Virus record (IMG/VR): IMGVR_UViG_3300025030_000041
Location: 124,001 to 188,000 of that record
Direction: 5' to 3' (one strand)
DNA: 64,000 bases
The translations under genes and the position numbers were made by a program. This document shows, in pieces, positions 5,968 to 60,613 of the stretch. The notes beneath the pieces are model-generated. The model was given only the letters and a program-made list of their open reading frames with translations, was not told the origin of the DNA and ran no database searches. How positions within the stretch are numbered: the first letter of the stretch is position 1; every line of letters starts with the position of its first letter.

Positions 5968-5978
5968 TAAAAAATAAA

Positions 5979-8585: not shown

Positions 8586-8592
8586 TTTAAAT

Positions 8593-44995: not shown

Positions 44996-46429
44996 TTATA
45001 AAGTATCTACTGTTAATTTAATTAAGTCAGCCATAGATTTAAATGGTTGTTTACTATTTATTACTTTCTTTAGTGCATCTTCTACTAATTTTTCGTCGAA
45101 CCCAGCTTTAATTAATTTAGTTTTAGCTTTACTTAAAATCTCCGAGTCTTTTATATTTTTTGCTTTATTTACTTCAGGTTTATTTACAGCGTCTTTAATT
45201 GTAAAAGTTACAAAATTTTCTACAGTTTCTTCTGCTTGTTTAGTAACTTTCTCTAATTCTTTCTTTTTAGTTTCATCTTCTTTTTGTTTTAGTTGAGTTT
45301 CTAATTTAAAAATAAGTTCTTTTTGTTTTTTTAATTCTTCTACATATTTAGAAGTATCAGTTGGTTTAACAACAGTATTTAATTTATTAATATCAGTATT
45401 TAAATTTTGTTCTTCCTCTTTTAATCTCTTATTTAAACCGGATATTTCGACTTGAATTTTTTCTTTTTCTTTTTTAGTAATATTGGCACTATTAATAATA
45501 TTTTCTTTTTGCCTAATAGATTTTTTAATAATTATAATATTTTTATTAGTTATATCAATCTGTTCTTTTAAATCATTAATACTAGCCCGAGGAGCTTCTT
45601 CTTTTTTTTCGGTAGGCACTTCTTTTTTTTCAGTAGGCCCTTCTTTTTTCTCAATAGGTATTTCTAATTTCGAAATACTTTCTGTAGCTTGCTTATTACT
45701 TTCAATAAATTCATTTTTAAATTTTTCTAAGTCTTTAAATAATGGGTCTTTACTAATATCTTCTGATGGAATTAAAGCCTGCCTAACATCTGCTTCTAAA
45801 TTAGTCAAAGCAACTTTAATAAGATTAAACCGGTTCAATAATATATCTTTGATTGCCACTAACTCTTTAACTCTTTTCGGTTTATCATGGTATTTTTCTG
45901 CTAACTTTTTTAAATCATTTACGAAATTATCAAATTTATTTTCTATAAATTCTATATTAGATGTTTTAGCTTTTCGCAAAGCTTCCTTTGCATTTTTAGT
46001 TCTTTCATATAATATTTCAGTTCTTGTTTTCAATTCGTCATACTCAGGCAATCCTCGCTGCTGAGATTTTTTCAATTGCTTTAATGCAATTGTTCCTTTG
46101 TAATATTCCTCTTCTAACATTAATTCTCTAAATAATAAAGTTAAATACGTTTTTAATAATTTACTAGAACTAATAGTAGAATCACCTAACACAGCGTCAG
46201 CTATATCTCTTACAGATTGACCTTTAAATTTTCTAAATTTCTTAAATCTTAAATCTTTAGCATCTATACTTTCTTCTAAAGAATCTAACCCTACTATATC
46301 TTCACCTTCTTTTTTTATTTTTAAAGACTCTTTATCAAATTTAGCCTTAGTAAATAACCCATGTATAAAACTAAATAACCCCTCGTTAATACTATTTTCT
46401 TGCATTTTATTTTTTTTATTTTTAAGCAA
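44996..46429 (-). CDS. Lys/Glu-rich coiled-coil protein, putative internal head protein
   Basis: SINE|GLFSFI possible processing site; long heptad stretches. Confidence 0.5.
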   Translation of the reverse strand: MLKNKKNKMQENSINEGLFSFIHGLFTKAKFDKESLKIKKEGEDIVGLDSLEESIDAKDLRFKKFRKFKGQSVRDIADAVLGDSTISSSKLLKTYLTLLFRELMLEEEYYKGTIALKQLKKSQQRGLPEYDELKTRTEILYERTKNAKEALRKAKTSNIEFIENKFDNFVNDLKKLAEKYHDKPKRVKELVAIKDILLNRFNLIKVALTNLEADVRQALIPSEDISKDPLFKDLEKFKNEFIESNKQATESISKLEIPIEKKEGPTEKKEVPTEKKEEAPRASINDLKEQIDITNKNIIIIKKSIRQKENIINSANITKKEKEKIQVEISGLNKRLKEEEQNLNTDINKLNTVVKPTDTSKYVEELKKQKELIFKLETQLKQKEDETKKKELEKVTKQAEETVENFVTFTIKDAVNKPEVNKAKNIKDSEILSKAKTKLIKAGFDEKLVEDALKKVINSKQPFKSMADLIKLTVDTL

Positions 46430-49400
46430 CTTTTAATAAAGTTAAAATTCTATTTCCCATTGTTGCAGTTGCTCCAGACGTTAACCATCTTCCTTCTATT
46501 GCTTGCCCAGCTGAAACTGTTACAATAGCAGTTGTAGTAGCTATAAATCTATCATTATTACCATTATTTAATAATACAGTTTTATCTGAATTAGTTACTA
46601 AAGATCCATTTGCATATACTGATATAGTTATTGATCTAGAATTTGTAGTATGCGTTAAATCTGTATTAAACCATACAATATATGTTCCAGCTCCAGGAGT
46701 AATTGTCATATCAGTAGCAAGAACTGCAGTAGCAGAAGCCGTTGTAATATTTCCAGCAGCATTTACACTATTATATGGCAAGTTAGGAGCTCCCCATTCT
46801 ATTCCATTAGCTGCCCCTGAATTTGCAATTATAGCTTGCCCATTAGTTCCTACCCCTAGCCTAACATTATTAGTTCCACTATGAGTTATAATATCTCCTT
46901 TAGTAGTTAAAGGAGATAAATTATTAAATCCAGTAGTTTGAGTAGAAGCATTAGTTCCTCCATTTGCTATAGGCAATACTCCAGTAACTCCTGTAGTTAA
47001 TGAAATATTAGTTATTGTATTTAAACTACCATTTATTGTTTTATTTGTTAATGACTGAATAAAATCTTGAAATACAAACGTATCATTTCCAGTTAATAAT
47101 GGTAAAGATATAGTTCTATCTGCTAAAACGGCTGATCCACTAAAAATATAATTAAATGTATTACCAGGATTTCTTAATTTTAAATATGTATCTCTAAATA
47201 TTTGTTCAAATAATCCAAATGTATTAGATTGGTCATTATATATAATACCTGAATTTAATTGTACTTTATTAGTAATTGTTATTTTAGTAGACGTATGTGT
47301 ATTAATATTAATGTCTGATACTGCATTTGTTCCAATTGAATGTTGATGGTCAGACTTAGCAAAGCTATTTGCAATTCCTATACTATTAGATGTACTAACT
47401 GAAATAGGGATTCCACTAGTTAATGGGTCACTTCCATTAGGTAAGTGTCTAGATGCATGAGATGTTACATCTATTCCATCTACTAGATTTATATTAATAA
47501 TATTATTATTATTTAAATCTAAATTGCCAGTTAACAAACGAGTTCCATTAGTTAATAAATATTGTGGATGGTCATCATCACTTAATCCTAATAAATTACC
47601 ATGGTTAGCTCCGGCACTAATTGCACTTGAACTTCCAGCAAAAGTTGGTCTCTCGTCTCTAATTTGTATTATATTAAAGGTTCCTTCTTTAACTACAATT
47701 GATGCAATAGGAGTAACTGAATCTATAAAAAATGGAGGAGGAAGAGGTAATGCCGCAGACTCAACTTCAATTAGTGTTGCATATTCGGCTTGTGCGTATA
47801 TTAGCATATACCGTTCAGTATTGCCTTCTCCTGATAAATATAATGAATGTTTAGCATAATATCCTGATGTTATTGGAGTTAATGTTCCAGTGTTAGTATC
47901 ATAATATGTATTACTTGCAGTATTTTGAGAATATTTATACCAACTGTTACTACCATCTCTATAAAAGGCTTCCCATGTTATAGAGGTTCCCCCCGTTGGA
48001 AGATACTCTTTAGTTCCAAAATGATAATGACCTCCTGTTACATCTAGTTGTCTGTCTATAGCAGATTCAGAAACAGTAGATCCTGAATTAAATATTGTTC
48101 CAATTACTTCTCTTATATAATCTTCTAATTCATTTGCATGATTATTAATATTAATTGAACTTGTATCTATAAAATTTAAAGATCCATCTCTAACTGCAGC
48201 TCGACCTAATATAACATTATATTTTAAATCAGGGTCTGATGCAGAAACAGCTACAGTAGAACTAGAGTTTACATAAACATAATTATGTGAATTATTAGTT
48301 AAATTTAAAACGGTAGTATTCCAACTAACTTCTTTTTTATAATTTAGAAGTTGATCTGTTAAAAATCCAGTTCCAGCTTCAACTAATACTTGTAATGCAG
48401 GCGAGCCATATTCTGATAAATTTCCACCAGTTAATACTCCAGTTACTATACTAGATTTAAGTAATTTAGTTATATTAGTAAGTCTATCAGTTCTAAGCCC
48501 TTGATAAATATCTCCAGTTACAACATTTCCACCAACTACTCCTGATTCATTAAATGATATACTAAACGAGGCATTATCTGGATTTATAAAAATTCTACTT
48601 CTACTTCCTATTCCAGTATAACCCCCAATTGTTAATGGATGTAAAACTGATAAATCCTCTTCATTTTCAGCTAAAATACTACCAGCTACTATAATAGTAC
48701 ATCCACTTCCTACATTTCCATTTTCAATTCCAATATTCCAGTGTTTAATTTCAGTACTTAAAATATCACAAGATGCTCCATTTTGTAAATATATTCCAAC
48801 TCCTACTAAAGGCGAACCTCCTGGACCATATAACTCTCCTCCTATTATTCCTAATTCGGCCTCAACTCCAGTTGCATAAATTCCATACGAATCCCCTATA
48901 GCGTGAAGATGAATCGTATCGATATGAGTAGATGCCTCATATCCGTTATTTGAATCTATACATATTCCTTTCGAAAAATTTCCAGTTATACTAATTCCGT
49001 TTATAAAAGACTCTGTATCTTGATTTTCAGATTTAATTAATACTCCTATATCACAATCATTAATACTTATATTATAAATAGAATCGTGTGTAACTTCAGC
49101 GTCATTAATATAAATTGCAGAGTAGTCAGATCCTGCATTTTTTAGCGCTAGATTAGATATTTGGGTATATTCGCCAAGACTTATGATATGATGTAAACTT
49201 GAGTCAGGCTCTATTATTATATTCGTATTAGAGTGTCCTATTATAGAAACATAAGGCTTATTTTTTAAATCTATTAAGGGTTCAGTATATGTACCTGGGC
49301 CAACTCGTAGTTCATACCTATTATTTATAGTATTATTTGTAATACTATTTAATGCAGTAACAATAGATGAATAATCTCCTCCAAGTTTAGCTACATTTAT

Positions 49401-50540
49401 TACATTTTTATCTTGACCTTGAATATAAATAGCACTTCCATTTAATTCAGATTTAGTTCTATCTATTAAACCATTAAATACTCCAACTGCATTAGAATTT
49501 TCAACAACTAAGTCTTGGGTACAGTCTTCAAAACTAACAGCATTTGCAAATAAAGTTTGGCCTGCTCCAGTATTAGGAAGCCAAATACCTTTAGCAAATC
49601 CTCTTAAATTTAGTCCAATTAATCTTAGTTTACCTCCATTTATAGCTTTAATTCCAGTATTTCCTGCTCCTGGACATCTAATTTGTACAGAATTTGTAAT
49701 AAATTCACAATTTAATCCATCAACGATAGCGACTTCAGTAGGATATGGAGTAGACATTCCAGTAGTTATACTATTCTGTAATGCGATTTTACCAATTCCT
49801 GAACCATTATTTGTTGCAATAAATCCTTTATTAAATTGGTAATTGCTACCAATCATGCCTTTGTTTATAAAAACAGTAGAGTCATTTCCAGGAGCTTCAC
49901 ATTTTACTAAAATGTCGTTATTACCAAATCTTACAAATTCTACATGAAATGCGTCATTAGTTGTTCCAGTTAGACTAGAATGATATACTGCGGCATATCC
50001 TGTTCCAGTTGCTCCTGTTAAAGTACAACAACTAACTTCAGAATTAATTGATCCAATGATTACATGTTTATTAGGAGAATCAACCTGTATTATAGTGACA
50101 TCTTCATTAGTTCCACTAAGATAAACGTATGGTTTTAATGTAATAGTATCTTCAGTAAATATTCCAGGCCCAGTTTTTACATAATATCTATTAGATGAAG
50201 TATTATCAGTTATAGAATCTATTGCGGTTTTTATTGAAGAGAATTCTCCAATTCCAGGATTTAGTTTTACATTTATTACATTTTCTGTAAAAAGTCTATT
50301 ATCATTAATAAATATAGTATTATTTAAATCAGATAATGAAGTTATATCAATACCATTAAATTTTGCAGTGATATAGCCTAAGTCTAGTGCATTTCCTAAA
50401 TCTGTTGAATTTCTAAGTTCATCAGAACTATATTCTTGTTCTAAATCATAGTTTGTAGTAGGATGTGTAAATGTTCTTTTTCCTAAATCATTGAATATTA
50501 TAGTTCCTAATGTTCCAGTCGTTGTTATTAAAAAAGCCAT
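46422..50540 (-). CDS. tail fibre/tailspike with two beta-helix-like modules
   Basis: duplicated GxFSSIxxAxxSITxN...Y...GPG.Y.E pectinesterase-like openers; Gly/Thr/Asn-rich fibre C-terminus. Confidence 0.7.
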   Translation of the reverse strand: MAFLITTTGTLGTIIFNDLGKRTFTHPTTNYDLEQEYSSDELRNSTDLGNALDLGYITAKFNGIDITSLSDLNNTIFINDNRLFTENVINVKLNPGIGEFSSIKTAIDSITDNTSSNRYYVKTGPGIFTEDTITLKPYVYLSGTNEDVTIIQVDSPNKHVIIGSINSEVSCCTLTGATGTGYAAVYHSSLTGTTNDAFHVEFVRFGNNDILVKCEAPGNDSTVFINKGMIGSNYQFNKGFIATNNGSGIGKIALQNSITTGMSTPYPTEVAIVDGLNCEFITNSVQIRCPGAGNTGIKAINGGKLRLIGLNLRGFAKGIWLPNTGAGQTLFANAVSFEDCTQDLVVENSNAVGVFNGLIDRTKSELNGSAIYIQGQDKNVINVAKLGGDYSSIVTALNSITNNTINNRYELRVGPGTYTEPLIDLKNKPYVSIIGHSNTNIIIEPDSSLHHIISLGEYTQISNLALKNAGSDYSAIYINDAEVTHDSIYNISINDCDIGVLIKSENQDTESFINGISITGNFSKGICIDSNNGYEASTHIDTIHLHAIGDSYGIYATGVEAELGIIGGELYGPGGSPLVGVGIYLQNGASCDILSTEIKHWNIGIENGNVGSGCTIIVAGSILAENEEDLSVLHPLTIGGYTGIGSRSRIFINPDNASFSISFNESGVVGGNVVTGDIYQGLRTDRLTNITKLLKSSIVTGVLTGGNLSEYGSPALQVLVEAGTGFLTDQLLNYKKEVSWNTTVLNLTNNSHNYVYVNSSSTVAVSASDPDLKYNVILGRAAVRDGSLNFIDTSSININNHANELEDYIREVIGTIFNSGSTVSESAIDRQLDVTGGHYHFGTKEYLPTGGTSITWEAFYRDGSNSWYKYSQNTASNTYYDTNTGTLTPITSGYYAKHSLYLSGEGNTERYMLIYAQAEYATLIEVESAALPLPPPFFIDSVTPIASIVVKEGTFNIIQIRDERPTFAGSSSAISAGANHGNLLGLSDDDHPQYLLTNGTRLLTGNLDLNNNNIININLVDGIDVTSHASRHLPNGSDPLTSGIPISVSTSNSIGIANSFAKSDHQHSIGTNAVSDININTHTSTKITITNKVQLNSGIIYNDQSNTFGLFEQIFRDTYLKLRNPGNTFNYIFSGSAVLADRTISLPLLTGNDTFVFQDFIQSLTNKTINGSLNTITNISLTTGVTGVLPIANGGTNASTQTTGFNNLSPLTTKGDIITHSGTNNVRLGVGTNGQAIIANSGAANGIEWGAPNLPYNSVNAAGNITTASATAVLATDMTITPGAGTYIVWFNTDLTHTTNSRSITISVYANGSLVTNSDKTVLLNNGNNDRFIATTTAIVTVSAGQAIEGRWLTSGATATMGNRILTLLKVA

Positions 50541-50548
50541 TTATTATC

Positions 50549-51004
50549 TTATCTTATTTTAAATACTGCTTCAATTGTTGGGTGGTCAATTAAAGTCCCA
50601 TTACAATATAATTGAACCTTATCTCCTGCATTAAAATTTATATTATATGATGAATATCCAGAATTGGTTGCACTTATATTTAAAAATGCTCCTGTTACTA
50701 AAACTTCATTAACATGAACTTCAGCTGACCATGTGAAATTACCATCTGTTGCAGCACTTATGTATAATAGAGTCGCATTAAACGGTAAAATAAAAGGGCT
50801 TTGATTCATATAGATTGAGTCTAATCCTTTTAAATACGAATTAGTGGTATTTCCATTTTTACCACCAAGAACTTGTATAGTTTTAGTTAATGAATCTATA
50901 TTTACATAATTCATATTAACACCATCAGTTCCAACATCAGGAGAACCAACATTAATTAATTTGTTATTATCTAGGTCTATATCAGTAAGAAAGGTCTTTG
51001 CCAT
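50549..51004 (-). CDS. tail fibre-associated protein
   Basis: IDLDNNKLINVGSP...DGVNMNYV fibre motif; upstream of the large fibre gene. Confidence 0.55.
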   Translation of the reverse strand: MAKTFLTDIDLDNNKLINVGSPDVGTDGVNMNYVNIDSLTKTIQVLGGKNGNTTNSYLKGLDSIYMNQSPFILPFNATLLYISAATDGNFTWSAEVHVNEVLVTGAFLNISATNSGYSSYNINFNAGDKVQLYCNGTLIDHPTIEAVFKIR

Positions 51005-51101
51005 TTAGTTTATTTATTTTCTTTTTAAAATTATCTTTTAAAAATTTATTTATTTTAAAATCTATTTTCAAATAAATAATAAGAAAATATTGTATATAAA
51101 A

Positions 51102-51614
51102 ATGGGATATGCTAAATTATATGAAGAGTTTCTTTTTGAAGTATCAGTAGAAGCTGAAGATGTAAAAACAGAAGATTTAATATCAGAAGATAAGTTTAAA
51201 TCTCTAATTACTAAATTAGTTAAACATGAATTAAAAGAAGAACTTGATCCAGAAGAAGAAACTAAAGAAGTTTCTATGGAAGGTTTAACTAAAGAAGAAC
51301 TTGAGAAAGTAAATAAGTTTATTGAAACTTTATGGGTTAATGAAGAACCTAGTAAAAATGAAGTAAATGAAGCTGATTGGTTTGGATTAAAAAGAAAAAA
51401 ATTAGAAGAAAATTTAAATAGTAAAGTAAAAGTATGGGTTCCTAACGCTATGAATAAGCCTACTCAAGAAATTCTTAATAAATTCTGGGAAGATGCTAAA
51501 AACGATAGTTATGACGGACTTCCTAGTATAGGCGAAGATAAAAACTTAATATATAGACCATCCAGTTCAATAAAATGGGGTACAAAACGACATGCTTTTG
51601 GCGGCGGTAAATAA
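51102..51614 (+). CDS. capsid-targeted acidic protein
   Basis: MGYAKLYEEFLFE; VNE|AD site; ATG at 51102. Confidence 0.6.
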   Translation: MGYAKLYEEFLFEVSVEAEDVKTEDLISEDKFKSLITKLVKHELKEELDPEEETKEVSMEGLTKEELEKVNKFIETLWVNEEPSKNEVNEADWFGLKRKKLEENLNSKVKVWVPNAMNKPTQEILNKFWEDAKNDSYDGLPSIGEDKNLIYRPSSSIKWGTKRHAFGGGK

Positions 51615-51743
51615 TTTTATTTAATTAGACACCAATAAGTTATATAATATATGATATATTTATTTTTATATATCGCATATTTTTATTAATTTTACAGTAC
51701 AATTAGTTCTTTATTATTGTTTAACAATTAAAACTTAGAACTC

Positions 51744-52088
51744 ATGGAAGCATTACTTATAACATTTAATAATGGAGTATTTTCACCATTATTATACGAT
51801 TCTAAAACTAATAAAATGTTAGTTATTATTAATAGAATGTGTTTAGAAAATGATTGTGAATTAATTCTTAATATAGAAGATTTTGAGTTATTAAAGCTTA
51901 CATATAATAAAGAAAATAAATTATACAATGGGCCTGGCATTTATAATAATAAATGCGAAAAAACTAATTATATAAAAGCCAATGATGTAATAGCGTATTT
52001 TACTAGAAAATATAGCGAGATTGGTGAAATGTCTGATGCTAAGTCTACTCAAATTAATATAAATAAGTCTTTACAATTCTTTAATTAA
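51744..52088 (+). CDS. hypothetical protein
   Basis: 114-aa ORF. Confidence 0.55.
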   Translation: MEALLITFNNGVFSPLLYDSKTNKMLVIINRMCLENDCELILNIEDFELLKLTYNKENKLYNGPGIYNNKCEKTNYIKANDVIAYFTRKYSEIGEMSDAKSTQININKSLQFFN

Positions 52089-52234
52089 TAATACACGAAA
52101 CATTTCTTTCTAAAGTATGAGGAGAAAATGATAAGTTCAGAATATATACTTTATTAATAATTCAACTAAATTCTATTTTTACACAGAGAGTATTACTAAT
52201 TTTTATATTTAAATTAAACTAAAAACTATAAATC

Positions 52235-54364
52235 ATGAAAAAAATTCTTTTATTTTTAAGTATTGGATATTTATCAATTCAATTTTCAAGTGCTCAGTTT
52301 GCAATAATAAAAACACAAACTAATGCAACATGTGTAGGAGATAGTAATGGTACAGCAAAAGTTTCAGTAAGTAGACGAACCCCTCCATATACTTACTCTT
52401 GGTCTAAAGACGGATCAACCGATGTTATTGGAATATCTGATAGTCTAAGTGGGTTAACTGCAGGGTCTTATAATTGCAATATTACAGACGTTGAGGGATT
52501 CCAAACTACCATCTCATTTACTATTACTTATAAAAGTCGTATTATTAGTACAACTGGGGGGTTTGGGTGTGAGACCATACTTCCATCATGTAGTTCTAGT
52601 AATACCGGGTCAGCATGTATACAAGTTTGGCAAGGAATTCCTCCATATACCTATTCTTGGAATACTACTCCTATACAGACAACTGAGACGGCCATTAATC
52701 TTTCCGAAGGATATTACACATATAGTATTACAGATTCACTTGGATGTTCAGATACTAATTCTTTTTATTTACCCTCAGCTATTCCTAACTTCAATCTTTC
52801 ATTCGCGGCAAGCCCACAAACTGGAGTATCACCTCTTGCTGTAGCTTTTAATAATAATACACCAAATATTGATAATTATACTTTTAAATGGTTTTTTGGT
52901 GATGGAAACTCTATTGATGATAGCAGTAGTACAGTATTTCATACATATCAATACTCAGGTAGCTATGATATAGCGCTAATTGCAATTGATAAAAATACTG
53001 GGTGTAGCGACACTCTTTTAAAAAATGGATTTATTTATACAACTGGAGCAGGATGTACACATAGCGCAACAATTACTACACTAAGTTCTACTACAGCGTG
53101 CCAAGGAGATACTATAATTCTTTCTGCAAATATAGACACATCTTTTACTTATAAATGGAATATAAACGGCACGGCTATTGATGGAGAAACTAATAATATA
53201 TTAAAAGCTACTCAAACTGGATATTATTCCGTAACTGTTTTAAAAGATAATTGTCCAGTTACCTCAAATGCTACACCAGTAACATTTAAAAATGGGCCAC
53301 CTATTCCTACTATTACTTCGGTAGGAACAATTGAGCCATGTATAGGTGGAGCAGTTACATTATCAGTTATGCCTATATATGGAATAAACTATTTATGGAA
53401 TACTGGAGATACTACTAATTCTATAACTACACATAATACTGGAATTTATTCAGTATCATTAGTAGATACTATATCAGGGTGTAGTAAAATGTCTGATATA
53501 TATAGACTTAGCACAACTCTATCTATACAAGATATTTGTATGGTAACATCAAATGATTCTTCAACTCATAATATTATTATTTGGGAAAAACCCATATCTA
53601 CTAATATAGATAGCTTTATAATTTATAGAGAAGTTGTAACGAATGTATATAATAAAATTGCAAGTATTAATTACAATTCATTAAGTGAATATCATGATTA
53701 TGACGCTAATCCAAATGTAACATCGTATAAGTATAAAATTGAAGTCATTGATACATGTGGCTCAGTGAGCCAATTAAGTAATTTTCATAACAGTATTCAT
53801 TTACAAAATTTAGGTAATGGTAATTTTCAGTGGACTCTATATAATATAGAAAATTCTATTAATCCTATCCAGTATTATATAATGTATCGTGACAATTATA
53901 GAAATGGCAGTTTTTTGCCAATAAGTAGTACTATTCCATCTGGAAATTCAACGTATACAGACTTAGAGTATTCAATGTATCCAGATGCTAAGTATAGAGT
54001 CGCAGCTTTATGGAATATTTCATGTATTCCTACTAAAAAAACTAATGAAATACCTCCAAATACTACGTATTCTAATATAAAAAATCAGGAAAGTATACCC
54101 ACTGGAATTTCATTTAATAATATAGATTTAAGTATCTCAGCTTACCCTAACCCTACAAATAATATAGTAAATATAGAAGGATTAGGACAGATTAAAAAAG
54201 GATCAATACAAATTATTAATATTACTGGACAAATCCTTTACACTGAGCATATTTCAAGCACTCCTAATATAAAACAAATAGATATTAGTAGTTACTATAA
54301 TGGATTTTATACTATAGTTATAGAAAATCATGGAATTAAAACCTATAAAAAAATAAAAAAATAA
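52235..54364 (+). CDS. T9SS-cargo-like surface protein: signal peptide, SprB-like repeats, PKD and Ig-like domains, type A C-terminal sorting domain
   Basis: MKKILLFLSIGYL signal; C..S.G.A....G.PPYTYSW repeats; WFFGDG...HTY...G.Y PKD; AYPNPTNNIVNI...IDISSYYNGFYTIVI...YKKIKK CTD. Confidence 0.85.
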   Translation: MKKILLFLSIGYLSIQFSSAQFAIIKTQTNATCVGDSNGTAKVSVSRRTPPYTYSWSKDGSTDVIGISDSLSGLTAGSYNCNITDVEGFQTTISFTITYKSRIISTTGGFGCETILPSCSSSNTGSACIQVWQGIPPYTYSWNTTPIQTTETAINLSEGYYTYSITDSLGCSDTNSFYLPSAIPNFNLSFAASPQTGVSPLAVAFNNNTPNIDNYTFKWFFGDGNSIDDSSSTVFHTYQYSGSYDIALIAIDKNTGCSDTLLKNGFIYTTGAGCTHSATITTLSSTTACQGDTIILSANIDTSFTYKWNINGTAIDGETNNILKATQTGYYSVTVLKDNCPVTSNATPVTFKNGPPIPTITSVGTIEPCIGGAVTLSVMPIYGINYLWNTGDTTNSITTHNTGIYSVSLVDTISGCSKMSDIYRLSTTLSIQDICMVTSNDSSTHNIIIWEKPISTNIDSFIIYREVVTNVYNKIASINYNSLSEYHDYDANPNVTSYKYKIEVIDTCGSVSQLSNFHNSIHLQNLGNGNFQWTLYNIENSINPIQYYIMYRDNYRNGSFLPISSTIPSGNSTYTDLEYSMYPDAKYRVAALWNISCIPTKKTNEIPPNTTYSNIKNQESIPTGISFNNIDLSISAYPNPTNNIVNIEGLGQIKKGSIQIINITGQILYTEHISSTPNIKQIDISSYYNGFYTIVIENHGIKTYKKIKK

Positions 54365-54423
54365 TTAAATATTAAATACTGCTAAATTACAATATACTTT
54401 TGTATTATTTTAATACAAGTATG

Positions 54424-54460
54424 TATATCAAAAACTTTTCTTATATTTGTATTAAATACT
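54424..54460 (+). promoter_or_regulatory. Bacteroidota-type promoter related to the promoter module
   Basis: TATATCAAAAACTTTTCTTATATTTGTATTAAATA; TATATTTG at 54442. Confidence 0.6.
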
Positions 54461-54492
54461 AAGTTTTATTTTTAACCTAAAACCTATATATC

Positions 54493-54906
54493 ATGACATT
54501 AGATGAATCTATAAAAGTACTTGAATTATTTAACAAGTGGAGAAGAGGTGAAGAGATACCTCAAGAAAACCCGACTAAAATTGGAATAGCAATTGATATT
54601 GTTTTAGATGAATTAAAAAAGTTAAGCCACTTTACGCATAATACAGTAGAATGTGATAAAAATAGGATAGGCCCTACTGATTTAATAGACTTAGAAAAAA
54701 ATGATTTAGTTAAATTATTAACAGTTACATTGCCATATTATTCAAAACTAAGTGAATCTGAAAAAGACCTAGTTGCTAAAGGTGGATTATTACCAAATGG
54801 TAGTACTACAGGAGAGCTATATTGGAATTATTGTAAGTTAGTTAGTATGGACCGGCTAGATTTATTTAAATTATATGTTATATGCAAAGACAGTTGGAAG
54901 AGATAA
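54493..54906 (+). CDS. hypothetical phage protein (possibly fused modules)
   Basis: N-terminal FNKWRRG...KIGIAID motif. Confidence 0.65.
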   Translation: MTLDESIKVLELFNKWRRGEEIPQENPTKIGIAIDIVLDELKKLSHFTHNTVECDKNRIGPTDLIDLEKNDLVKLLTVTLPYYSKLSESEKDLVAKGGLLPNGSTTGELYWNYCKLVSMDRLDLFKLYVICKDSWKR

Positions 54907-55046
54907 CCCCAAACTATTGATTATAAAAGAGCAATGACTCATTTTTTAAAAATTAATATTTGCATAGCTTTCATAGATTTTTAAAGTGCAGTCTAAACAT
55001 ATATACATAATAGCCAAAAATTAAATAGACCTAACAAACTTAGAAA

Positions 55047-55309
55047 ATGCAAACGAAAATTTGGATAACATATAAGCCTGATATTGACAAATTTCGGGAA
55101 TGGGATATTATGATGCCAACTCATTGGATAAAACTTCCTGATAATCCGAAAGAGTATTATTTTTTAGTTTATTAATAGAAACAAAAGAAGGAACAATGAA
55201 AGTATGTCGGGATGATTGGATTATCAAAGAACCATTTCAAACAGGCAATATATATATTTATCCTTGTAAAGACGATATTTTTCAAAGTACCTACTACGTC
55301 GTCTTATAA
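55047..55309 (+). pseudogene. two overlapping truncated gene remnants
   Basis: PTHWIKLPDNP (DUF551-like C-terminus) and TKEGTM...DWIIKE...YPCKDDIF.STY, in different frames, both lacking N-termini. Confidence 0.55.
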
Positions 55310-55316
55310 TTGGTAG

Positions 55317-55393
55317 TAATGATTTAGTGTATGAGAAGGATTGCTTAGATGAACTACCAAATTAACTACAGTTGTTGATAGCAAACTTTCTTG
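55317..55393 (+). repeat. truncated copy of hairpin H9
   Basis: GTGTATGAGAAGGATTGCTTAGATGAACT...AGCAAACTTTCTT, with terminal ATACAC..GTTA missing. Confidence 0.75.
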
Positions 55394-55414
55394 TAAAATT
55401 TAACTTTTTGAGCT

Positions 55415-55585
55415 ATGGATAGAATAAGAATTGAAATATTAGAATACAATTATTGGGAGCATTTTAAAGCACTAAAAGATATTGCATTGATTTTACCAAT
55501 TGAACACCCAAAAAGAAAGAAACTTGAAAAAGCTACAAACGAAATATTGAAAGAATTACACGAACTAAAGAGTGGTGGCAGTTAA
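55415..55585 (+). CDS. 56-aa cassette protein (not in ORF track)
   Basis: own translation MDRIRIEILEYNYWEHFKALKDIALILPIEHPKRKKLEKATNEILKELHELKSGGS. Confidence 0.6.
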   Translation: MDRIRIEILEYNYWEHFKALKDIALILPIEHPKRKKLEKATNEILKELHELKSGGS

Positions 55586-55598
55586 ATTTTATTTCTGC

Positions 55599-55722
55599 TA
55601 ACAGTTGGGGGTATATGTAGTGCGAGATTTTAAACACTAAACTTGACTTAACCCCAGAACTTAATTAGAAGTAGAAATGTTGAATAAATCGCTGAACCTC
55701 ACATTACATATACACCTTGTTA
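55599..55722 (+). repeat. attC-like hairpin H13 (124 bp)
   Basis: TAAC agttg GGGGTATATGTAGTGCGAG ... CTCACATTACATATACACC tt GTTA. Confidence 0.85.
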
Positions 55723-55772
55723 TACCCCGTATTTCGTGGGTTGGAAATTATAAACTTAATAAATAAATAAAA

Positions 55773-56003
55773 ATGAAAAATCTAATAGTAGAAAAACCAG
55801 AAGTAAAATTGAATGAAGAAGAAAAAGTAAATTCCTTCATTGAAAACTCAAAAAGTAATGATGGTGTTATCATTAAAATTCAAAATAATGTATATAGACA
55901 TTTAATAGATAAAGATGGTAAATGTTTTATTAAAAATATAACACCTATTTTTGAGTTTGATAGTTACGATGAATTGGAAACGATTTTAAAAACACAAATA
56001 TGA
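55773..56003 (+). CDS. cassette hypothetical protein
   Basis: 76-aa ORF in module 55719-56202. Confidence 0.6.
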   Translation: MKNLIVEKPEVKLNEEEKVNSFIENSKSNDGVIIKIQNNVYRHLIDKDGKCFIKNITPIFEFDSYDELETILKTQI

Positions 56004-56185
56004 TAACATTAATTTATTTAGGTATAGGGTGGTTAATTGGATTTTTAATAATTCAAACTTATCAAAAATTAGGTACTATAATAGTAGATACTAACGTAGA
56101 TAGTTATAGATTGAGAGTTAAATGTTTACTTTCATTTTTAGGTATTATAAATTTAATAGTAGTTCCTATTTTGAGGGTAAGGTAA
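56000..56185 (+). CDS. cassette two-TM membrane protein
   Basis: two hydrophobic segments; ATGA overlap with previous ORF. Confidence 0.55.
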   Translation: MITLIYLGIGWLIGFLIIQTYQKLGTIIVDTNVDSYRLRVKCLLSFLGIINLIVVPILRVR

Positions 56186-56285: not shown

Positions 56286-56359
56286 TATTTAGTTCAAAAA
56301 TAAAGTACTAAAAATGTTAATATATCAAAAACATTTCTTATTTTTGTATTAAATATAAT
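56282..56359 (+). promoter_or_regulatory. gene-less promoter module, copy 3 (no downstream + strand gene)
   Basis: near-identical to copy 2; TAnnTTTG at 56339. Confidence 0.7.
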
Positions 56360-56469
56360 ATATATATATTCAATTAACGTTATCATATTGATTATTAATA
56401 TATTTAGTTAAAAATATTTAAAGATTCATTTTAAAACTTTAAAAATAGAGACTGTCTTATTTAACCTAC

Positions 56470-57270
56470 TTACTTACTTACTTTTACAGTATCAGATAGT
56501 GCCATTATTTTATATAATTCAGTTAAATTAACACATAATCCGGGTGTACTATTCATTTTAGTATCAATAATTTCGGCCAGGGTTCTTAGTAAAATAAATA
56601 AAGGTTCTCCTAATACAGCTTTATACTGAGGAATATGCCCAATTTTAACAGTTGCTCCATCAGTCCAAATTTCATTTGATATATCATGAATACTACTTCC
56701 TGCTGTAGTATTAACTTGAGAACTACTATTAATTGTTATAATTCCTCCTTTTAATTCTATCATAGACTGAGTTCCTTTATGTTCTAATACTATAGAATTA
56801 TCTGGCAGAATATTAACTTTAGATTCATCTAATTCAAAAGTTAATCCTTTAGTCGTAGTATAATACATTTTTAGTTTTACATCGCCATCAAAACAAAATA
56901 TATGAGTTCCATCATACTCACTTTGTAATTGGTCTTTAACGTCTTTTGCTAATTCTTGGTGAAAATGATATTCTGGACAGTAAATATCTTGGTTATCAAA
57001 AGTAACTTTAAGAATAGCCCCATTTTTAGGTATTGAGATTTGTCCAGATAATCCGTCTTGCCCAAAAATATTACCTAAACGAGGATACGCCCATGGTAAA
57101 TCTTCAGTTGCTAAATTATCAAAAACGCCAAATACATTAATTTTACATCTTCCTTTTTTTTCAGGATCTTGATTATCTACAACCTTACCTAAAAAATCTC
57201 TACCTAAAAATTCATCTCTACCTAAATTATAAATATCTCTATTTTGGCCTATTTGCCTTGATAAACTCAT
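56470..57270 (-). CDS. baseplate central spike/hub, gp5/VgrG N-terminal OB-fold type, no lysozyme domain
   Basis: FLGKVVDNQDPEKKGRCKINVFG...DLPWAYP...SIPK.G..L.V.F. Confidence 0.8.
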   Translation of the reverse strand: MSLSRQIGQNRDIYNLGRDEFLGRDFLGKVVDNQDPEKKGRCKINVFGVFDNLATEDLPWAYPRLGNIFGQDGLSGQISIPKNGAILKVTFDNQDIYCPEYHFHQELAKDVKDQLQSEYDGTHIFCFDGDVKLKMYYTTTKGLTFELDESKVNILPDNSIVLEHKGTQSMIELKGGIITINSSSQVNTTAGSSIHDISNEIWTDGATVKIGHIPQYKAVLGEPLFILLRTLAEIIDTKMNSTPGLCVNLTELYKIMALSDTVKVSK

Positions 57271-57304
57271 AATACTAAACTCTTAATTTATTTGTAAACA
57301 TTTC

Positions 57305-58480
57305 TTATCGTTGAGGTTTCTTATCATATACATTTCCTAACTCAGTTCTTATATTAGGTGGTATAAATTTATTAATATCATCATAAACTTTCTTATTAGT
57401 TAATGGTAAGTTAAGAAGCAAGGGTTTTCCTTTATATACATTACCCATTGGAGTTAATTTAGATTCTAACTTATTTACAACTCCACCTATTAATTCTGCT
57501 GGAGCTCTTCCTATTTTACCTAATACATTATCTTTAATAATGTCAGCTTTTTTAATTGCATTACTAAAAATTCCAAAATTATCTCCAGTATAAGCTGTTT
57601 TTAATTTATTAGTTTCGTCTAATCTAATTTTATCTACATTATACTCATCTTGTGTTTGCGGGGCATGCCCGACTCCTCTTATCATTGTTGTATCAAAATA
57701 TGGAAATTTATTTTTTTCATACCACTTATGTACTTTAATTTTAAATTTGCCATTAGCCATTTTAGGATCTGCATTATCAACAGAATCTCCACCTGGAAAA
57801 CTTTCACTAAAATCAAATTCACATTGAGTAAATACAAATTCTATATAGTTTAATTGATTTACTATACTTTCTAATCGTAAAAGCCGTTCCTCATCAGTTA
57901 AAGCATTCATTTTTACATTATCTAATGCATCCAATGTTGCTCTAATATTTCTAAATTCACAAACTTGAATACTCATCTCAAAATATCTTAAATTTTCTGG
58001 AACTACTTCTCGCATATATACAGTGTCATAAATTGCGCTTCTATATAAATTTGCTAAAAATGCCATCCGCAAATCAACTGATTCTAAACAATTAAAAGTT
58101 AAAACTGCAGTTTGAAGCGGCTTACTTATATCAGTACTCAATTTCCATACTTCATTTAAGCCTTCAATAGACTGAAAATACCAAGGAGTAGTATCCTGTA
58201 TCCAACTTATAATATCTCTAAACTTATCTAAATAATCAGACTCCTTTTTATATCCTAATAAACTTAAATATTCAATTGCGCCATACCCATCACCTGGACG
58301 AGTAAATAACGGTGAATTCATTAATTTGCTATCATATTGTAAAAAAGAATTTAAATTAAATTGAACATTAAATGAAAGAAAGGTTGGATCTTCAATTCCA
58401 TATTTACTTTCAAATAAAAATCCTCTTCTAAAATTTTGAAATTCATTAGTATTTACAAAACTTCTTAGATTAGTAGCCAT
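57305..58480 (-). CDS. putative baseplate/tube-initiator structural protein
   Basis: EDPTFLSF, PWYFQSIEGL, CLESVDLR, REVVPENLRYF; baseplate cluster context. Confidence 0.45.
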   Translation of the reverse strand: MATNLRSFVNTNEFQNFRRGFLFESKYGIEDPTFLSFNVQFNLNSFLQYDSKLMNSPLFTRPGDGYGAIEYLSLLGYKKESDYLDKFRDIISWIQDTTPWYFQSIEGLNEVWKLSTDISKPLQTAVLTFNCLESVDLRMAFLANLYRSAIYDTVYMREVVPENLRYFEMSIQVCEFRNIRATLDALDNVKMNALTDEERLLRLESIVNQLNYIEFVFTQCEFDFSESFPGGDSVDNADPKMANGKFKIKVHKWYEKNKFPYFDTTMIRGVGHAPQTQDEYNVDKIRLDETNKLKTAYTGDNFGIFSNAIKKADIIKDNVLGKIGRAPAELIGGVVNKLESKLTPMGNVYKGKPLLLNLPLTNKKVYDDINKFIPPNIRTELGNVYDKKPQR

Positions 58481-58493
58481 TTAATTTATTTAT

Positions 58494-60008
58494 TTAAACT
58501 GCTGAATTTGGATTAGTACTACCTATTTCAGGTATAGGCTTCCACTCTCGCTTTGTTAAAATCATCTGAGTCCAAAAATTAGTTGTATCACCTGTATATT
58601 GGTTACTTCCCTTACTATAATTTACTATTAAACTATCTACATAATAATAATCAGATAAAAATCTATCAATTTTTATATTTAATTGTTTTTCAGCTTGATA
58701 GATACTTCCATCTAAATCTTTTTCTTCATATTCTTCACTATGTACAGAATCTGACGAGTTTTCATTTACTATTACAATTGGTATTCTCATACCTCTAATT
58801 ACAGATGGATTATACCCAAGAGTAGTTATTTTTAATTGGATTTTATTTAATTCAATATTATTTTGAAAATTATGAAATTTGCTATATATATAATTCATAT
58901 GTCTATTATCGTATTCTATTCCAGCCCATTTATGTACTTCTAAATCTTTTAAAACATCATTTGTCGGTTTCAAACTATTCTTTTTAGATTTCATATTTCG
59001 AGTAACTAATGACTCTACAAATAAATCTTGATATTTATTAGTTTCTAGATTAGCTTCATAATAATTCATTTTACGTCTTACTCCATTCTCAATTAAGTTA
59101 CTTCCTAAATTAGAAACTAAATTATAACTTGTAATAAACATTGGAGACTTTCTATATTTAGAAAAATTACTAAATAATAATCTCATAGTATCGTCTTCTA
59201 TTTCTTTTTTATCATTTAATAAATAATCAGTCATAGTTAATGAATAAAAAATAAAATCATCTATTGTTTGCTCATCACTAAATTGGTTATTGACATTAAT
59301 TAAATTTAAATAATAGTACTTATCAATAAATGTTCTATAAAAAGATTCATCATTTTTCCAAATATGTTTTACTGTATCTTTTATAAAACCTTCATAATTC
59401 CAATTTGGATTAATCCATGTCATTTTATCATCCATGGAGTCTTCATTTGTAGCATATCCAATCTGCATTTCAATAGCTAATTGTTTAAATAAATCAAAAG
59501 ATGTTAAGTCTTTATACGCTTTAATATTATATTTCCATAAAGTCGGAACAAATAAAATACCACTTATTGTAAATGTTTTATTTTTACCATGCATTTCCAT
59601 TTCTCCACTTCCACTTGACATTGGAGTTGCATCAATTATTAAAAAATCAGCGCGTATAGGTTTATATTGCTCTTTTTTAGACCTAATATATATACTTATC
59701 TTTTCATCAGATTTAGGAAAAAAAGCACTATTTAAATTTCCATTTACATCTAATACTGTTACAGTAATACTTGGCAAAAATGAATCTTCTTCTAATCTCA
59801 ATGACCTAATAGTATCATATGCAAACCTATATTTACCAATTTGAATAAATGGAAATAAATCCCCGTATATTCTAGATTCATCTCTTAACGAATCTTTCCT
59901 TTGTTCAGGTTTAACACTTGGATTATCTAAAACAGTATCCATAGTAGACATCTTTTCTAATGGTATCTTAGGATCAACTAGAGTAAGTATTTTATTTGAA
60001 ACTCCCAT
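58494..60008 (-). CDS. putative baseplate hub protein (gp27/GpD-like)
   Basis: position between gp53-like and gp5-like genes; FIDKYYYLNLINVN motif. Confidence 0.5.
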   Translation of the reverse strand: MGVSNKILTLVDPKIPLEKMSTMDTVLDNPSVKPEQRKDSLRDESRIYGDLFPFIQIGKYRFAYDTIRSLRLEEDSFLPSITVTVLDVNGNLNSAFFPKSDEKISIYIRSKKEQYKPIRADFLIIDATPMSSGSGEMEMHGKNKTFTISGILFVPTLWKYNIKAYKDLTSFDLFKQLAIEMQIGYATNEDSMDDKMTWINPNWNYEGFIKDTVKHIWKNDESFYRTFIDKYYYLNLINVNNQFSDEQTIDDFIFYSLTMTDYLLNDKKEIEDDTMRLLFSNFSKYRKSPMFITSYNLVSNLGSNLIENGVRRKMNYYEANLETNKYQDLFVESLVTRNMKSKKNSLKPTNDVLKDLEVHKWAGIEYDNRHMNYIYSKFHNFQNNIELNKIQLKITTLGYNPSVIRGMRIPIVIVNENSSDSVHSEEYEEKDLDGSIYQAEKQLNIKIDRFLSDYYYVDSLIVNYSKGSNQYTGDTTNFWTQMILTKREWKPIPEIGSTNPNSAV

Positions 60009-60019
60009 GTATTAAATAG

Positions 60020-60610
60020 TTAACCAAATATTTTTTTAGTAAGTAATCTTTCTTTTAATCTAGCCTTACTTAATGGTTCAGGACAATTTTGAGTAGTTAT
60101 TTGAGTAACATCTGGGCCGAATACAATTTCTCCATTTTCTATTTTAATATTCTGAGTTCCGGGCTTAGATATATTAGGAGGTAATACTTCTTTTTTTCCT
60201 AACTCTACCTTCTGCTTAATTAAATCTAACCTCTTTTTATCTTTAACTGTTTCAGCCTTTATTGCAATCTCTTCTTTTTTATTTTGATTTTCATTTATAC
60301 CATCAGACGGAGTAACTATCATTGCATCCATCTCGCTTCTCTCTGGGATTAGCAGGATTTGCCCAGGCTCAATTGATAATGGATTTGATATTCCATTATA
60401 AGTTAATATATAATCTAACAGAGACTCATCCCCGTACTTTAATTTAGCTATTAAATCAGGTCGCATTGCAAATTCATCTGTTACTACTACAATGTCTTTA
60501 ATAGCTGGAGCAAATTTATATTTAATAGTATTAACAGCTAAGTCAACTATAACATCGTTATTAGGTTTTTTAAAAAACCTTTTATTAAGAAGAGTCGTTA
60601 AATTTAGCAT
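60020..60610 (-). CDS. baseplate wedge protein, gp53/LysM-like
   Basis: MRPDLIAKLKYGD....DYILTYNGISNPLSIEPGQILLIP. Confidence 0.75.
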   Translation of the reverse strand: MLNLTTLLNKRFFKKPNNDVIVDLAVNTIKYKFAPAIKDIVVVTDEFAMRPDLIAKLKYGDESLLDYILTYNGISNPLSIEPGQILLIPERSEMDAMIVTPSDGINENQNKKEEIAIKAETVKDKKRLDLIKQKVELGKKEVLPPNISKPGTQNIKIENGEIVFGPDVTQITTQNCPEPLSKARLKERLLTKKIFG

Positions 60611-60613
60611 TAA

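What the first reader, a model, noticed from the sequence alone, without database searches (positions are those of the whole stretch)
52235..54364. Phage-encoded T9SS cargo adhesin
Seen: a Sec-type signal peptide, SprB-like repeats, PKD and Ig-like domains and a type A C-terminal sorting domain (YPNP...KKIKK) in an intact 709-aa ORF between virion genes and array 2. Established: such CTDs route proteins through the Bacteroidota type IX secretion system to the cell surface. Inference: the phage remodels the host surface (superinfection exclusion, aggregation, T9SS jamming) or recently captured a host gene. It also points to a Bacteroidota host.
Basis: partly seen in the sequence, partly recalled or inferred. 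Interest (0 to 1): 0.7.

Follow-up and report, generated by a model that had tools for sequence, protein, structure and literature searches.

The report
Jumbo phage gene for T9SS-exported adhesin
A 246-kb phage of Bacteroidota bacteria carries an old, host-derived gene for a bead-string surface protein with both address tags for the host's type IX secretion system; this is real but has published precedent and no function has been tested.

Summary
Window 52235-54364 (+) is an intact 709-aa ORF. It has a Sec signal peptide, two SprB-type repeats, a PKD domain, two Ig-like domains, a double FN3-like module and a type A T9SS C-terminal domain that passes the Pfam and NCBIfam cut-offs.

The gene sits in a 246-kb, 26% GC jumbo myovirus record from groundwater, between the tail-fibre and baseplate genes. 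An independent assembly spans it at the depth of its flanks, so it is not a chimera.

All relatives found are chromosomal T9SS cargo genes of uncultured low-GC Bacteroidota, at 38-48% identity over the full length. Its third-position GC matches the phage, so the capture is old, not recent.

Related large phages carry other signal-peptide + CTD genes at other loci: one of 30 IMG/VR relatives, and four of five 630-735-kb phages. A complex model docks the CTD onto a Bacteroidota PorV, scoring 0.83 against 0.01 for the best control.

Most likely the infected cell exports it through Sec and then T9SS as a surface or released adhesin-like protein. What it does for the phage is inferred only.

Phage-encoded T9SS cargo, with the same hypothesis, was published in 2020 (Cryophage). 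I rate this a new member of a known kind, of moderate interest.

The parts
52089..52234 (+). Upstream intergenic region of 146 nt, presumably holding the gene's own promoter, which is not defined. There is no Shine-Dalgarno sequence.
   Evidence: Sequence read. The PWM of the phage's 17-copy promoter-like element scores only 1.9 here, and 153 sites in the genome score as well or better. The sigma-70 scan is not above shuffles.
52235..54364 (+). Complete ORF of 709 aa plus stop: a T9SS type A cargo, adhesin-like.
52235..52297 (+). Sec/SPI signal peptide, residues 1-21. Predicted cleavage is SSA|Q, which exposes Gln22 (the Bacteroidetes Q-rule).
   Evidence: Sequence. The N-termini of cellular homologues are alike. 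pLDDT is below 50 for residues 1-19. The Q-rule is described in PMC5837995. No predictor was run.
52298..52777 (+). Two SprB-type Ig-like repeat domains, residues about 22-107 and 120-181.
   Evidence: Pfam PF13573, 2 stretches, E 4.5e-10. PHROG 'Hoc-like' matches on residues 28-89. AF2 strands.
52793..53044 (+). PKD domain, residues 187-270.
   Evidence: PF00801 E 2.6e-8 and PF18911 E 1.6e-7.
53045..53518 (+). Two Ig-like beta-sandwich domains, residues 271-428.
   Evidence: AF2 model. Weak PKD_3 match. 37-48% identical to the nine closest cellular homologues.
53519..54124 (+). Double FN3-like module just before the CTD, residues 429-630. It is the best conserved part and has three invariant Cys.
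   Evidence: 51-57% identity to metagenomic homologues and up to 63% to MAG loci. Atlas structural matches with TM 0.74-0.81 lie in Bacteroidota proteins, several of which also carry type A or CHU_C sorting domains.
54125..54361 (+). Linker and T9SS type A C-terminal sorting domain, residues 631-709, with seven beta strands.
   Evidence: PF18962 and TIGR04183 pass their cut-offs. It aligns to the CTDs of PDB 7pzj and 8glk/8glj. Seven strands between 634 and 708. Predicted docking on PorV: ipSAE 0.83 against a best control of 0.01.
54394..54422 (+). Weak AT-rich hairpin 30 nt after the stop codon. A terminator role is doubtful.
   Evidence: Minimum free energy -8.8 kcal/mol, z -1.84, 9 of 200 shuffles as good. 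The terminator scan did not report it.
54409..54468 (+). Copy of the phage's 17-copy promoter-like element, which contains a TAnnTTTG box. It serves the next gene (54493-54906) and marks the end of the target's transcription unit.

Best explanation
The gene is a genuine accessory ('moron-like') gene of a jumbo myovirus that infects Bacteroidota. It descends from a chromosomal family of Bacteroidota T9SS cargo proteins. The phage lineage has held it long enough for its composition to become phage-like.

Shown here:
- Sec signal peptide, with Gln predicted at +1.
- A string of about eight Ig/PKD/FN3-type beta-sandwich domains with conserved cysteines and no enzymatic domain.
- A type A CTD at the extreme C-terminus.
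- Its own intergenic spacers, on the strand opposite to the neighbouring virion genes, in a region that varies among related phages.

Inferred mechanism:
1. The protein is made in the infected cell and crosses the inner membrane by Sec.
2. Signal peptidase I cleaves it. Gln22 may then be cyclised by the host glutaminyl cyclase.
3. It folds in the periplasm.
4. The PorV/SprA translocon recognises the CTD and carries it across the outer membrane.
5. PorU removes the CTD.
6. The protein is either released or fixed to the cell surface.

There it would act as a binding or coat protein that changes the infected cell's surface. The benefit to the phage is the least certain step. Candidates are masking or displacing T9SS-dependent surface receptors to exclude other phages, or sticking infected cells to surfaces or to neighbouring host cells.
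For: Domains and cut-offs.

Structure: all-beta AF2 model with a seven-strand CTD. The best PDB likeness is the Ig-string protein GhpA of Aureispira.

Phage context: the record is 246,115 bp and 92% complete. It encodes sheath, baseplate, terminase, topoisomerase II and helicase.

Contiguity: a single 4019-nt Logan contig covers 51703-55721 with 0 mismatches in two samples. Its depth is 19.9 and 10.8, against 19.6 and 11.7 for the flanking tail-fibre contig. Fragments of the gene's first 600 nt and its upstream region occur at 100% identity in two other samples from other studies, X5 and X6.

Origin: the nearest homologues lie among bacterial housekeeping and T9SS genes. 136 stretches in GTDB genomes encode a relative; the 79 loci kept are nearly all titled Bacteroidota, and a few only 'uncultured bacterium'. 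None was found in 2.9 million IMG/VR contigs. In the tree the phage copy sits on its own branch of length 0.69 inside the bacterial family.

Amelioration: GC3 is 15.1% against a phage median of 13.9% and 18-43% in the homologues.

Constraint kept: the phage copy keeps all 34 invariant columns of the 16-sequence alignment, seven Cys among them, and both targeting signals, although the CTD is only 20-32% identical to those of the homologues.

Recurrence: other signal-peptide + CTD ORFs occur in related large phages at other loci.

Docking: the CTD against PorV of a groundwater Bacteroidota MAG scores ipSAE 0.83, best control 0.01. The mark was reached by 51 of 78 solved complexes and 2 of 108 mismatched pairs. 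The runs agree in at least 92% of contacts and the partner's pLDDT is at least 77.

T9SS in likely host lineages: the MAGs that hold the closest homologues all encode PorV, and one has PorU next to it.
Against: - There is no expression or secretion evidence. No RNA run holding the gene was listed.
- The host is unknown, so the presence of a T9SS in it is assumed.
- No promoter could be assigned. The downstream hairpin is weak.
- The codon-usage fit to the phage is at the 7th percentile, although GC3 is typical.
- The PorV docking may reflect the model's memory of solved PorV-CTD complexes. It shows likeness, not binding.
- PHROG matches to Hoc-like decoration proteins, and the gene's position amid virion genes, allow a structural role.
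- Nothing here discriminates between the proposed benefits.
Confidence: 0.6

Rival explanations
1. It is a virion decoration or fibre-associated protein (Hoc-like). The Ig-like string would be displayed on the capsid or tail to bind surfaces or host glycans. The CTD would then be just another beta-sandwich, and the hydrophobic N-terminus would not work as a signal peptide.
For: PHROG matches to three 'Hoc-like head decoration' families, best E 1.7e-6. The gene lies between the tail-fibre and baseplate genes. BFVD structural matches include phage Ig/FN3 structural proteins.
Against: The N-terminus has the n-, h- and c-regions of an SPI signal peptide, like its cellular homologues. The CTD passes the curated T9SS cut-offs and docks on PorV in silico. 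The conserved cysteines fit an extracytoplasmic protein. The gene is on the opposite strand to the virion operons, with its own spacers. It is absent from the syntenic locus of related phages. A gene held this long for a cytoplasmic structural role would be expected to lose both export signals.
Confidence: 0.1
2. It is a neutral passenger: a host gene picked up by illegitimate recombination, carried without benefit to the phage, and possibly not expressed.
For: It is a singleton. No other IMG/VR contig encodes this family. It lies in a variable region. No promoter was identified. There is no RNA evidence.
Against: The ORF is intact over 2.1 kb. GC3 is fully phage-like, which needs long residence. 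Through that time the frame, all family-invariant residues and both targeting signals survived. The terminal branch (0.69) is close to the family median of 0.5. Other large Bacteroidota phages independently carry signal-peptide + CTD genes.
Confidence: 0.12
3. It is an assembly chimera or host contamination: the gene belongs to a bacterial contig wrongly joined to phage DNA.
For: All homologues are bacterial. The gene's GC, 30.5%, is above the genome mean of 26%.
Against: An independent assembly gives one contig across the gene and both neighbouring ORFs, with 0 mismatches and the same depth as the virion genes, in two samples. Phage genes lie on both sides within one 246-kb record. The higher GC lies in codon positions 1 and 2 (91st percentile), not in GC3 (65th percentile). 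The nearest bacterial homologue is only 42-48% identical.
Confidence: 0.02

Closest known systems
T9SS type A cargo genes of 'Cryophage', a 76-kb Bacteroidetes phage (Bellas et al. 2020, Nat Commun, PMC7468147)
   Same: These are phage-encoded proteins with T9SS type A sorting domains. They lie in flexible genome regions near tail-fibre variants. The authors proposed the same idea: the phage hijacks the host T9SS, possibly for superinfection exclusion or inter-strain competition.
   Different: The Cryophage cargoes are an endoglucanase, a GH39 and a PA14 protein. This one has no enzymatic domain. The host phage here is a 246-kb jumbo myovirus from groundwater, not a 76-kb cryoconite phage. I could not fetch the Cryophage record to compare sequences.
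Chromosomal SprB-repeat/PKD T9SS cargo proteins of uncultured Bacteroidota, e.g. P0001-P0009 and loci L094-L172, including a Rifle groundwater MAG
   Same: They share the order PKD, two Ig-like domains, double FN3-like module, type A CTD, along with the signal peptide and the invariant cysteines. Identity is 38-48% overall, 51-57% in the residue 429-630 module against metagenomic homologues and up to 63% against MAG loci.
   Different: The 15 aligned cellular proteins are longer (760-1200 aa; up to about 1600 aa among the MAG loci), with more N-terminal repeats or extra domains. The phage copy is shorter than all 15 aligned homologues. Its GC3 is lower than in all 13 measured homologues.
SprB, the gliding-motility adhesin of Flavobacterium johnsoniae
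   Same: It contains SprB-type repeats (PF13573) and is a T9SS-dependent surface protein.
   Different: By my own knowledge, SprB is about nine times larger, carries a type B CTD (TIGR04131/CHU_C) and needs SprF. This protein has a type A CTD, and the phage genome has no CHU_C domain. It is not an SprB orthologue.
Signal-peptide + CTD ORFs of other large Bacteroidota phages: IMGVR_UViG_3300010883_000010, LR745206, LR756501, LR756502, LR756504
   Same: They have an N-terminal signal peptide, in five of the six ORFs read predicted to expose Gln at +1, plus Por_Secre_tail above cut-off. They occur in phages whose tail sheath is related to this one's.
   Different: The passenger domains are unrelated (PKD_6 + MAM, or small proteins of 140-522 aa) and the loci differ. 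None is a homologue of this protein's core.
Hoc-like Ig-domain decoration proteins of phage capsids
   Same: Tandem Ig-like domains, with PHROG profile matches.
   Different: By my own knowledge, Hoc has no signal peptide and no T9SS CTD and is encoded with head genes.

Membership tests
T9SS type A cargo (TIGR04183 / PF18962 CTD proteins) | A C-terminal domain of about 70-80 aa at the extreme C-terminus that matches the family profile above the curated cut-off | tested here: met
   PF18962 scores 43.1 bits (cut-off 27) over residues 637-707 of 709. TIGR04183 scores 29.3 bits (cut-off 23).
T9SS type A cargo (TIGR04183 / PF18962 CTD proteins) | An N-terminal Sec signal peptide for export to the periplasm | tested here: met
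   MKK, then a hydrophobic stretch, then SSA|Q, by inspection. Homologues have the same pattern. No SignalP-type tool was available, so this is met by sequence reading only.
T9SS type A cargo (TIGR04183 / PF18962 CTD proteins) | The CTD folds as a compact seven-strand Ig-like beta-sandwich | tested here: met
   The AF2 model has seven strands between residues 634 and 708, with pLDDT about 70-84. The definition is taken from the abstract of PMC11285876.
T9SS type A cargo (TIGR04183 / PF18962 CTD proteins) | The CTD is recognised by the PorV shuttle and the SprA translocon | tested here: inconclusive
   In silico only. ipSAE is 0.83 against a best control of 0.01. The mark was reached by 51 of 78 solved complexes and 2 of 108 mismatched pairs. 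The runs agree in at least 92% of contacts and partner pLDDT is at least 77. The pass may come from memory of solved PorV-CTD complexes.
T9SS type A cargo (TIGR04183 / PF18962 CTD proteins) | The producing cell has a T9SS, and secretion depends on it, with the CTD removed by PorU | not testable with these tools
   The host is unknown. MAGs with the closest homologues encode PorV, and one has PorU adjacent.
SprB gliding adhesin family | A type B CTD (TIGR04131 / CHU_C) with a cognate PorP/SprF-like partner | tested here: not met
   The protein has no CHU_C match and neither does the genome. The CTD is type A.
SprB gliding adhesin family | SprB repeats (PF13573) | tested here: met
   Two stretches, E 4.5e-10. 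A shared repeat does not establish orthology.
Hoc-like phage decoration proteins | A cytoplasmic virion protein with no export signal, encoded in the head module | tested here: not met
   A signal peptide and a T9SS CTD are present. The gene lies on the opposite strand between the fibre and baseplate genes.
Phage accessory ('moron') genes | Not part of the conserved core, and variable among relatives | tested here: met
   The baseplate block is syntenic in four relatives, but nothing beyond the hub gene matches. Only 1 of 30 related records has any CTD gene.
Phage accessory ('moron') genes | An autonomous transcription unit with its own promoter and terminator | tested here: inconclusive
   The gene has its own spacers of 146 nt and 128 nt and is on the opposite strand to the virion genes. 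No promoter could be assigned and the hairpin is weak.

The most novel reading that the evidence does not exclude
Large phages of Bacteroidota may, as a recurrent strategy, encode their own cargo for the host's type IX secretion system (signal peptide + type A CTD). The infected cell would then re-dress its surface. This could block T9SS-dependent phage receptors against superinfection, or glue infected cells to surfaces or neighbours. The present adhesin-like protein, the PKD_6 + MAM protein of a related phage and the small CTD proteins of the 630-735-kb phages would be independent instances of one unrecognised host-takeover function.
Probability: 0.3. Interest if true: 0.6.

Novelty: new member of a known kind. 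Interest (0 to 1): 0.4.

Why it matters
T9SS-dependent surface proteins drive gliding, adhesion and virulence in Bacteroidota. Phage-resistant Flavobacterium mutants repeatedly carry mutations in gliding and T9SS genes (titles and abstracts listed). A phage that feeds its own cargo into this pathway could alter adsorption of rival phages, aggregation or surface attachment of infected cells.

The idea has been in print since 2020 but has never been tested. This gene is a compact, intact 709-aa candidate with no enzymatic domain, so it suits such a test.

The survey here adds that signal-peptide + CTD genes recur in the very large Bacteroidota phages. The jumbo-phage papers I searched did not mention this: T9SS had zero occurrences in the 25 listed.

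The gene also gives a phylum-level host assignment for an uncultured 246-kb groundwater phage.

Tried and rejected
1. Sister strain with a different cassette. Loose ends of Logan contigs at 52208 and 54456 suggested one. The 30-nt loose end matched two IMG/VR contigs. These share no DNA or protein similarity with this genome, only a chance AT-rich match of about 25 nt. Rejected.

2. Shared promoter. The target's upstream region scores only 1.9 with the PWM of the 17-copy element, and 153 genomic sites score as well. The sigma-70 consensus scan is at chance level. No expression class could be assigned.

3. Terminator. The hairpin after the stop codon is marginal.

4. Host by tRNA. The phage tRNA-Asn has no informative match in the three MAGs with the closest homologues.

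5. RNA evidence. Only three tiny metatranscriptomes from the same study were listed, and none holds the gene.

6. Direct comparison with Cryophage MT820023. The record is not in the phage collection.

7. PorV reference from Swiss-Prot. It is not held. I used PorV of a groundwater MAG instead.

8. Rfam. Only the tRNA was found in the window.

9. Alignment A1 was too variable for a genome scan. The scan was redone with the conserved module A2.

10. Pfam and PHROG on the small neighbouring ORFs (51090-51614, 51744-52088, 54493-54906, 55773-56003) and on the 1372-aa ORF gave nothing. Its 'tail fibre' label therefore rests on position, size and a weak fibre match (E 0.0086) of the ORF beside it (50549-51004).
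Full report
**Observation**

Window 52235-54364 (+) is an uninterrupted ATG-started ORF of 709 aa.

Profile searches give these matches:
- Por_Secre_tail, residues 637-707, E 5.4e-11, 43.1 bits against a curated cut-off of 27.
- SprB repeat, two stretches, E 4.5e-10.
- PKD, residues 187-253, E 2.6e-8.
- NCBIfam TIGR04183, the type A T9SS sorting domain, 29.3 bits against a cut-off of 23.

The N-terminus has the three regions of an SPI signal peptide and ends SSA followed by Gln. That is the pattern of the Bacteroidetes Q-rule (sequence; rule described in PMC5837995). No signal-peptide predictor was available, so this rests on reading the sequence and on the very similar N-termini of cellular homologues.

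An AlphaFold2 model built on 16 sequences (mean pLDDT 77, pTM 0.35, as expected for beads on a string) is entirely beta. After the signal peptide it shows two SprB-type domains, a PKD domain, two Ig-like domains, a two-domain FN3-like module, a disordered linker (620-631) and a seven-strand C-terminal sandwich. The best PDB likenesses are segments of GhpA, the Ig-string grappling-hook protein of Aureispira, followed by generic Ig/FN3 ectodomains. No catalytic fold appears.

The last 89 residues align to the CTDs of PDB 7pzj and 8glk/8glj.

The one exception is that I could not identify a tandem 'array 2' beside the gene.

**The carrier is a phage and the gene belongs to it**

The window is positions 124001-188000 of a single 246,115-bp IMG/VR virus record. 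The record is estimated 92% complete, has 26% GC and uses the standard genetic code.

The window encodes a 942-aa tail sheath, a gp5-like baseplate hub, a gp25-like wedge protein, large terminase, both topoisomerase II subunits and a helicase. The target sits in a small plus-strand island (51090-56185). On one side is a minus-strand fibre block (46422-51004) and on the other the minus-strand baseplate block (56470-62344).

Public groundwater metagenomes hold the stretch. In two samples the independent Logan assembly gives one 4019-nt contig covering 51703-55721 with no mismatch. Its depth is 19.9 and 10.8, against 19.6 and 11.7 for the contig that carries the fibre gene, and overlapping contigs link the two. 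In two further samples from other studies (X5, X6), fragments of the gene's first 600 nt and its upstream region occur at 100% identity. A chimera is excluded.

**Host**

The sheath's closest relatives in the phage collection, at 29-34% identity, are:
- the 460-735-kb uncultured phages LR7565xx and LR745206
- the Prevotella Lak phages
- Flavobacterium phage MaF61
- Tenacibaculum phages PTm1 and PTm5

Only 15 of 286 ORFs have a Shine-Dalgarno core. A 17-copy element of about 50 nt contains the Bacteroidota -7 box TAnnTTTG. Together with the T9SS signal and the origin of the homologues, this supports a Bacteroidota host. Nothing finer could be established.

**Origin of the gene**

The 5.8-billion-protein search returns 1499 hits. 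The best are 38-48% identical over 76-98% of the query, and all are longer, at 760-1200 aa. The three contexts examined are bacterial: PBP1, PorP/SprF, TonB-dependent receptor, sigma-70, DAP epimerase and HtrA.

The shared architecture runs from the PKD domain to the CTD. The most conserved part is residues 429-630, at 51-57% identity to the eight homologues aligned. The CTD is only 20-32% identical.

Scanning one genome per GTDB species with that module found 136 stretches encoding a relative. The 79 loci kept are nearly all titled Bacteroidota (a few only 'uncultured bacterium'), are mostly uncultured low-GC lineages, and include three paralogues in a Rifle groundwater MAG. The same scan of 2.9 million viral contigs found none. 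The phage collection holds only one weak match, to the SprB part.

In a maximum-likelihood tree the phage protein sits inside the bacterial family on its own branch of 0.69 substitutions per site, against a family median of 0.5. It has no supported sister.

The gene's GC3 is 15.1%. That is at the 65th percentile of the phage's genes, whose median is 13.9%, and lower than in all 13 cellular homologues measured (18-43%). The gene's higher overall GC lies in codon positions 1 and 2.

So the transfer went from bacteria to the phage lineage, and it was not recent. Through that time the reading frame, every family-invariant residue (seven cysteines among them) and both targeting signals were kept.

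**Is it core or accessory?**

In four related IMG/VR phages the baseplate block is syntenic up to the hub gene. Beyond it, nothing matches the window's genes 46422-56185.

Only one of 30 related records, most of them fragments, has any Por_Secre_tail domain. That protein is 1033 aa with signal peptide + PKD_6 + MAM + CTD, and it lies at a different locus.

Four of the five 630-735-kb phages carry one or two CTD ORFs above the cut-off. The four ORFs I could read in the huge phages (three of them above the cut-off) each have a signal peptide, and three of these end just before Gln. Lak-B2, PTm1 and MaF61 have none.

T9SS cargo genes are therefore sporadic in large Bacteroidota phages, were acquired independently, and recur.

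**Mechanism**

The steps shown and the steps inferred are listed under Best explanation.

One extra in-silico test was run. Residues 625-709 were folded with PorV of the groundwater MAG, whose PorV gene lies next to PorU. The result was ipSAE 0.83 in all three runs, with a best control of 0.01. The mark was reached by 51 of 78 solved complexes and 2 of 108 mismatched pairs. The runs agree in at least 92% of contacts and the partner's pLDDT is at least 77.

The contacts include the YPNP strand, the loop at 661-670 and the C-terminal strand. PorV-CTD complexes have been solved, so this shows that the phage CTD looks like a genuine PorV ligand. It does not show that it binds.

The residue 429-630 module has structural matches (TM 0.74-0.81) in Bacteroidota proteins with unrelated N-terminal domains. 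Several of those clusters also carry type A or type B (CHU_C) sorting domains. In the 15 aligned homologues the module lies directly before the CTD. I read it as a stalk or spacer; that reading is inference.

**Comparison with what is known**

Bellas et al. 2020 described three T9SS type A cargo genes in flexible islands of the 76-kb 'Cryophage'. They called it a unique occurrence and proposed hijacking of the host T9SS, possibly for superinfection exclusion (PMC7468147).

Q-rule signal peptides in Porphyromonas phages were noted in 2023 (PMC10367356). BFVD holds viral proteins named 'SprB repeat' and 'Por secretion system C-terminal sorting domain-containing protein'.

The 25 jumbo-phage papers listed contained no mention of T9SS.

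The finding is thus a new member of a known but untested kind. The protein is not an SprB orthologue, because it has a type A CTD and the genome has no CHU_C domain. It does not fit Hoc-type decoration proteins either.

**Verdict**

| Item | Result |
|---|---|
| Observation | confirmed |
| Interpretation | partly supported |
| Novelty | modest |
| Interest | 0.4 |

Cargo status and host phylum are supported. 'Recent capture' and chimera are not. Function is untested.

Noticed in passing
window 54409-54468 and 56306-56365 (+); also 32131 and 35912 (+); 17 copies in the 246-kb genome: A highly conserved element of about 50-60 nt that contains a Bacteroidota-type TAnnTTTG box. About 55 nt upstream it is often paired with a divergent arm on the other strand, for example at window 56281 (-). 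Several copies are followed by 140-500 nt without an ORF and with more G+C (GGTTTGCAG...). These may be divergent promoters, possibly driving small RNAs.
   Followed up: partly
window 5922-6608, 8563-9228, 17500-18393, 24376-25011, 26198-26833, 27822-28520, 44289-44993, 62946-63578: At least eight paralogous genes built from 63-bp (21-aa) leucine-rich-type repeats are scattered on both strands. Pfam gives only weak LRR_4 matches, and none has a CTD.
   Followed up: partly
G000:C1:77653-78120 (+) and 233753-234181 (-), outside the window: Two tyrosine recombinases (Phage_integrase, E 1.5e-39 and 2e-36) occur in a jumbo myovirus. They could serve integration, dimer resolution or DNA inversion.
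   Followed up: no
L088 8534-11635 (IMGVR_UViG_3300010883_000010); L007 1147-1707 (LR756502.1); L181, L183, L184 (LR745206, LR756504, LR756500): Other large Bacteroidota phages encode unrelated proteins with a signal peptide and a T9SS type A CTD: a PKD_6 + MAM protein of 1033 aa and small proteins of 186-496 aa. Five of the six ORFs read have a signal peptide that ends just before Gln.
   Followed up: partly
window 21709-23685 (-): A 658-aa ORF gives strong PHROG matches to homing/HNH endonuclease families (E 8.6e-132) among the structural genes.
   Followed up: no
window 51082-51730 and 55599-55721: The source samples hold a second variant at similar depth. It has 4-14% divergence and a 268-nt skip inside ORF 51102-51614. 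Between about 51730 and 55599, which includes the target gene, only one form is seen. A co-occurring relative may differ there.
   Followed up: partly
window 347-796 (+): A 149-aa ORF has a signal-peptide-like N-terminus ending SYS followed by Gln, so it is another candidate exported phage protein. It has no family match.
   Followed up: no
whole genome: Shine-Dalgarno cores are nearly absent: 15 of 286 ORFs have one at -20 to -5. Upstream regions are A/T-rich, as in Bacteroidota.
   Followed up: yes
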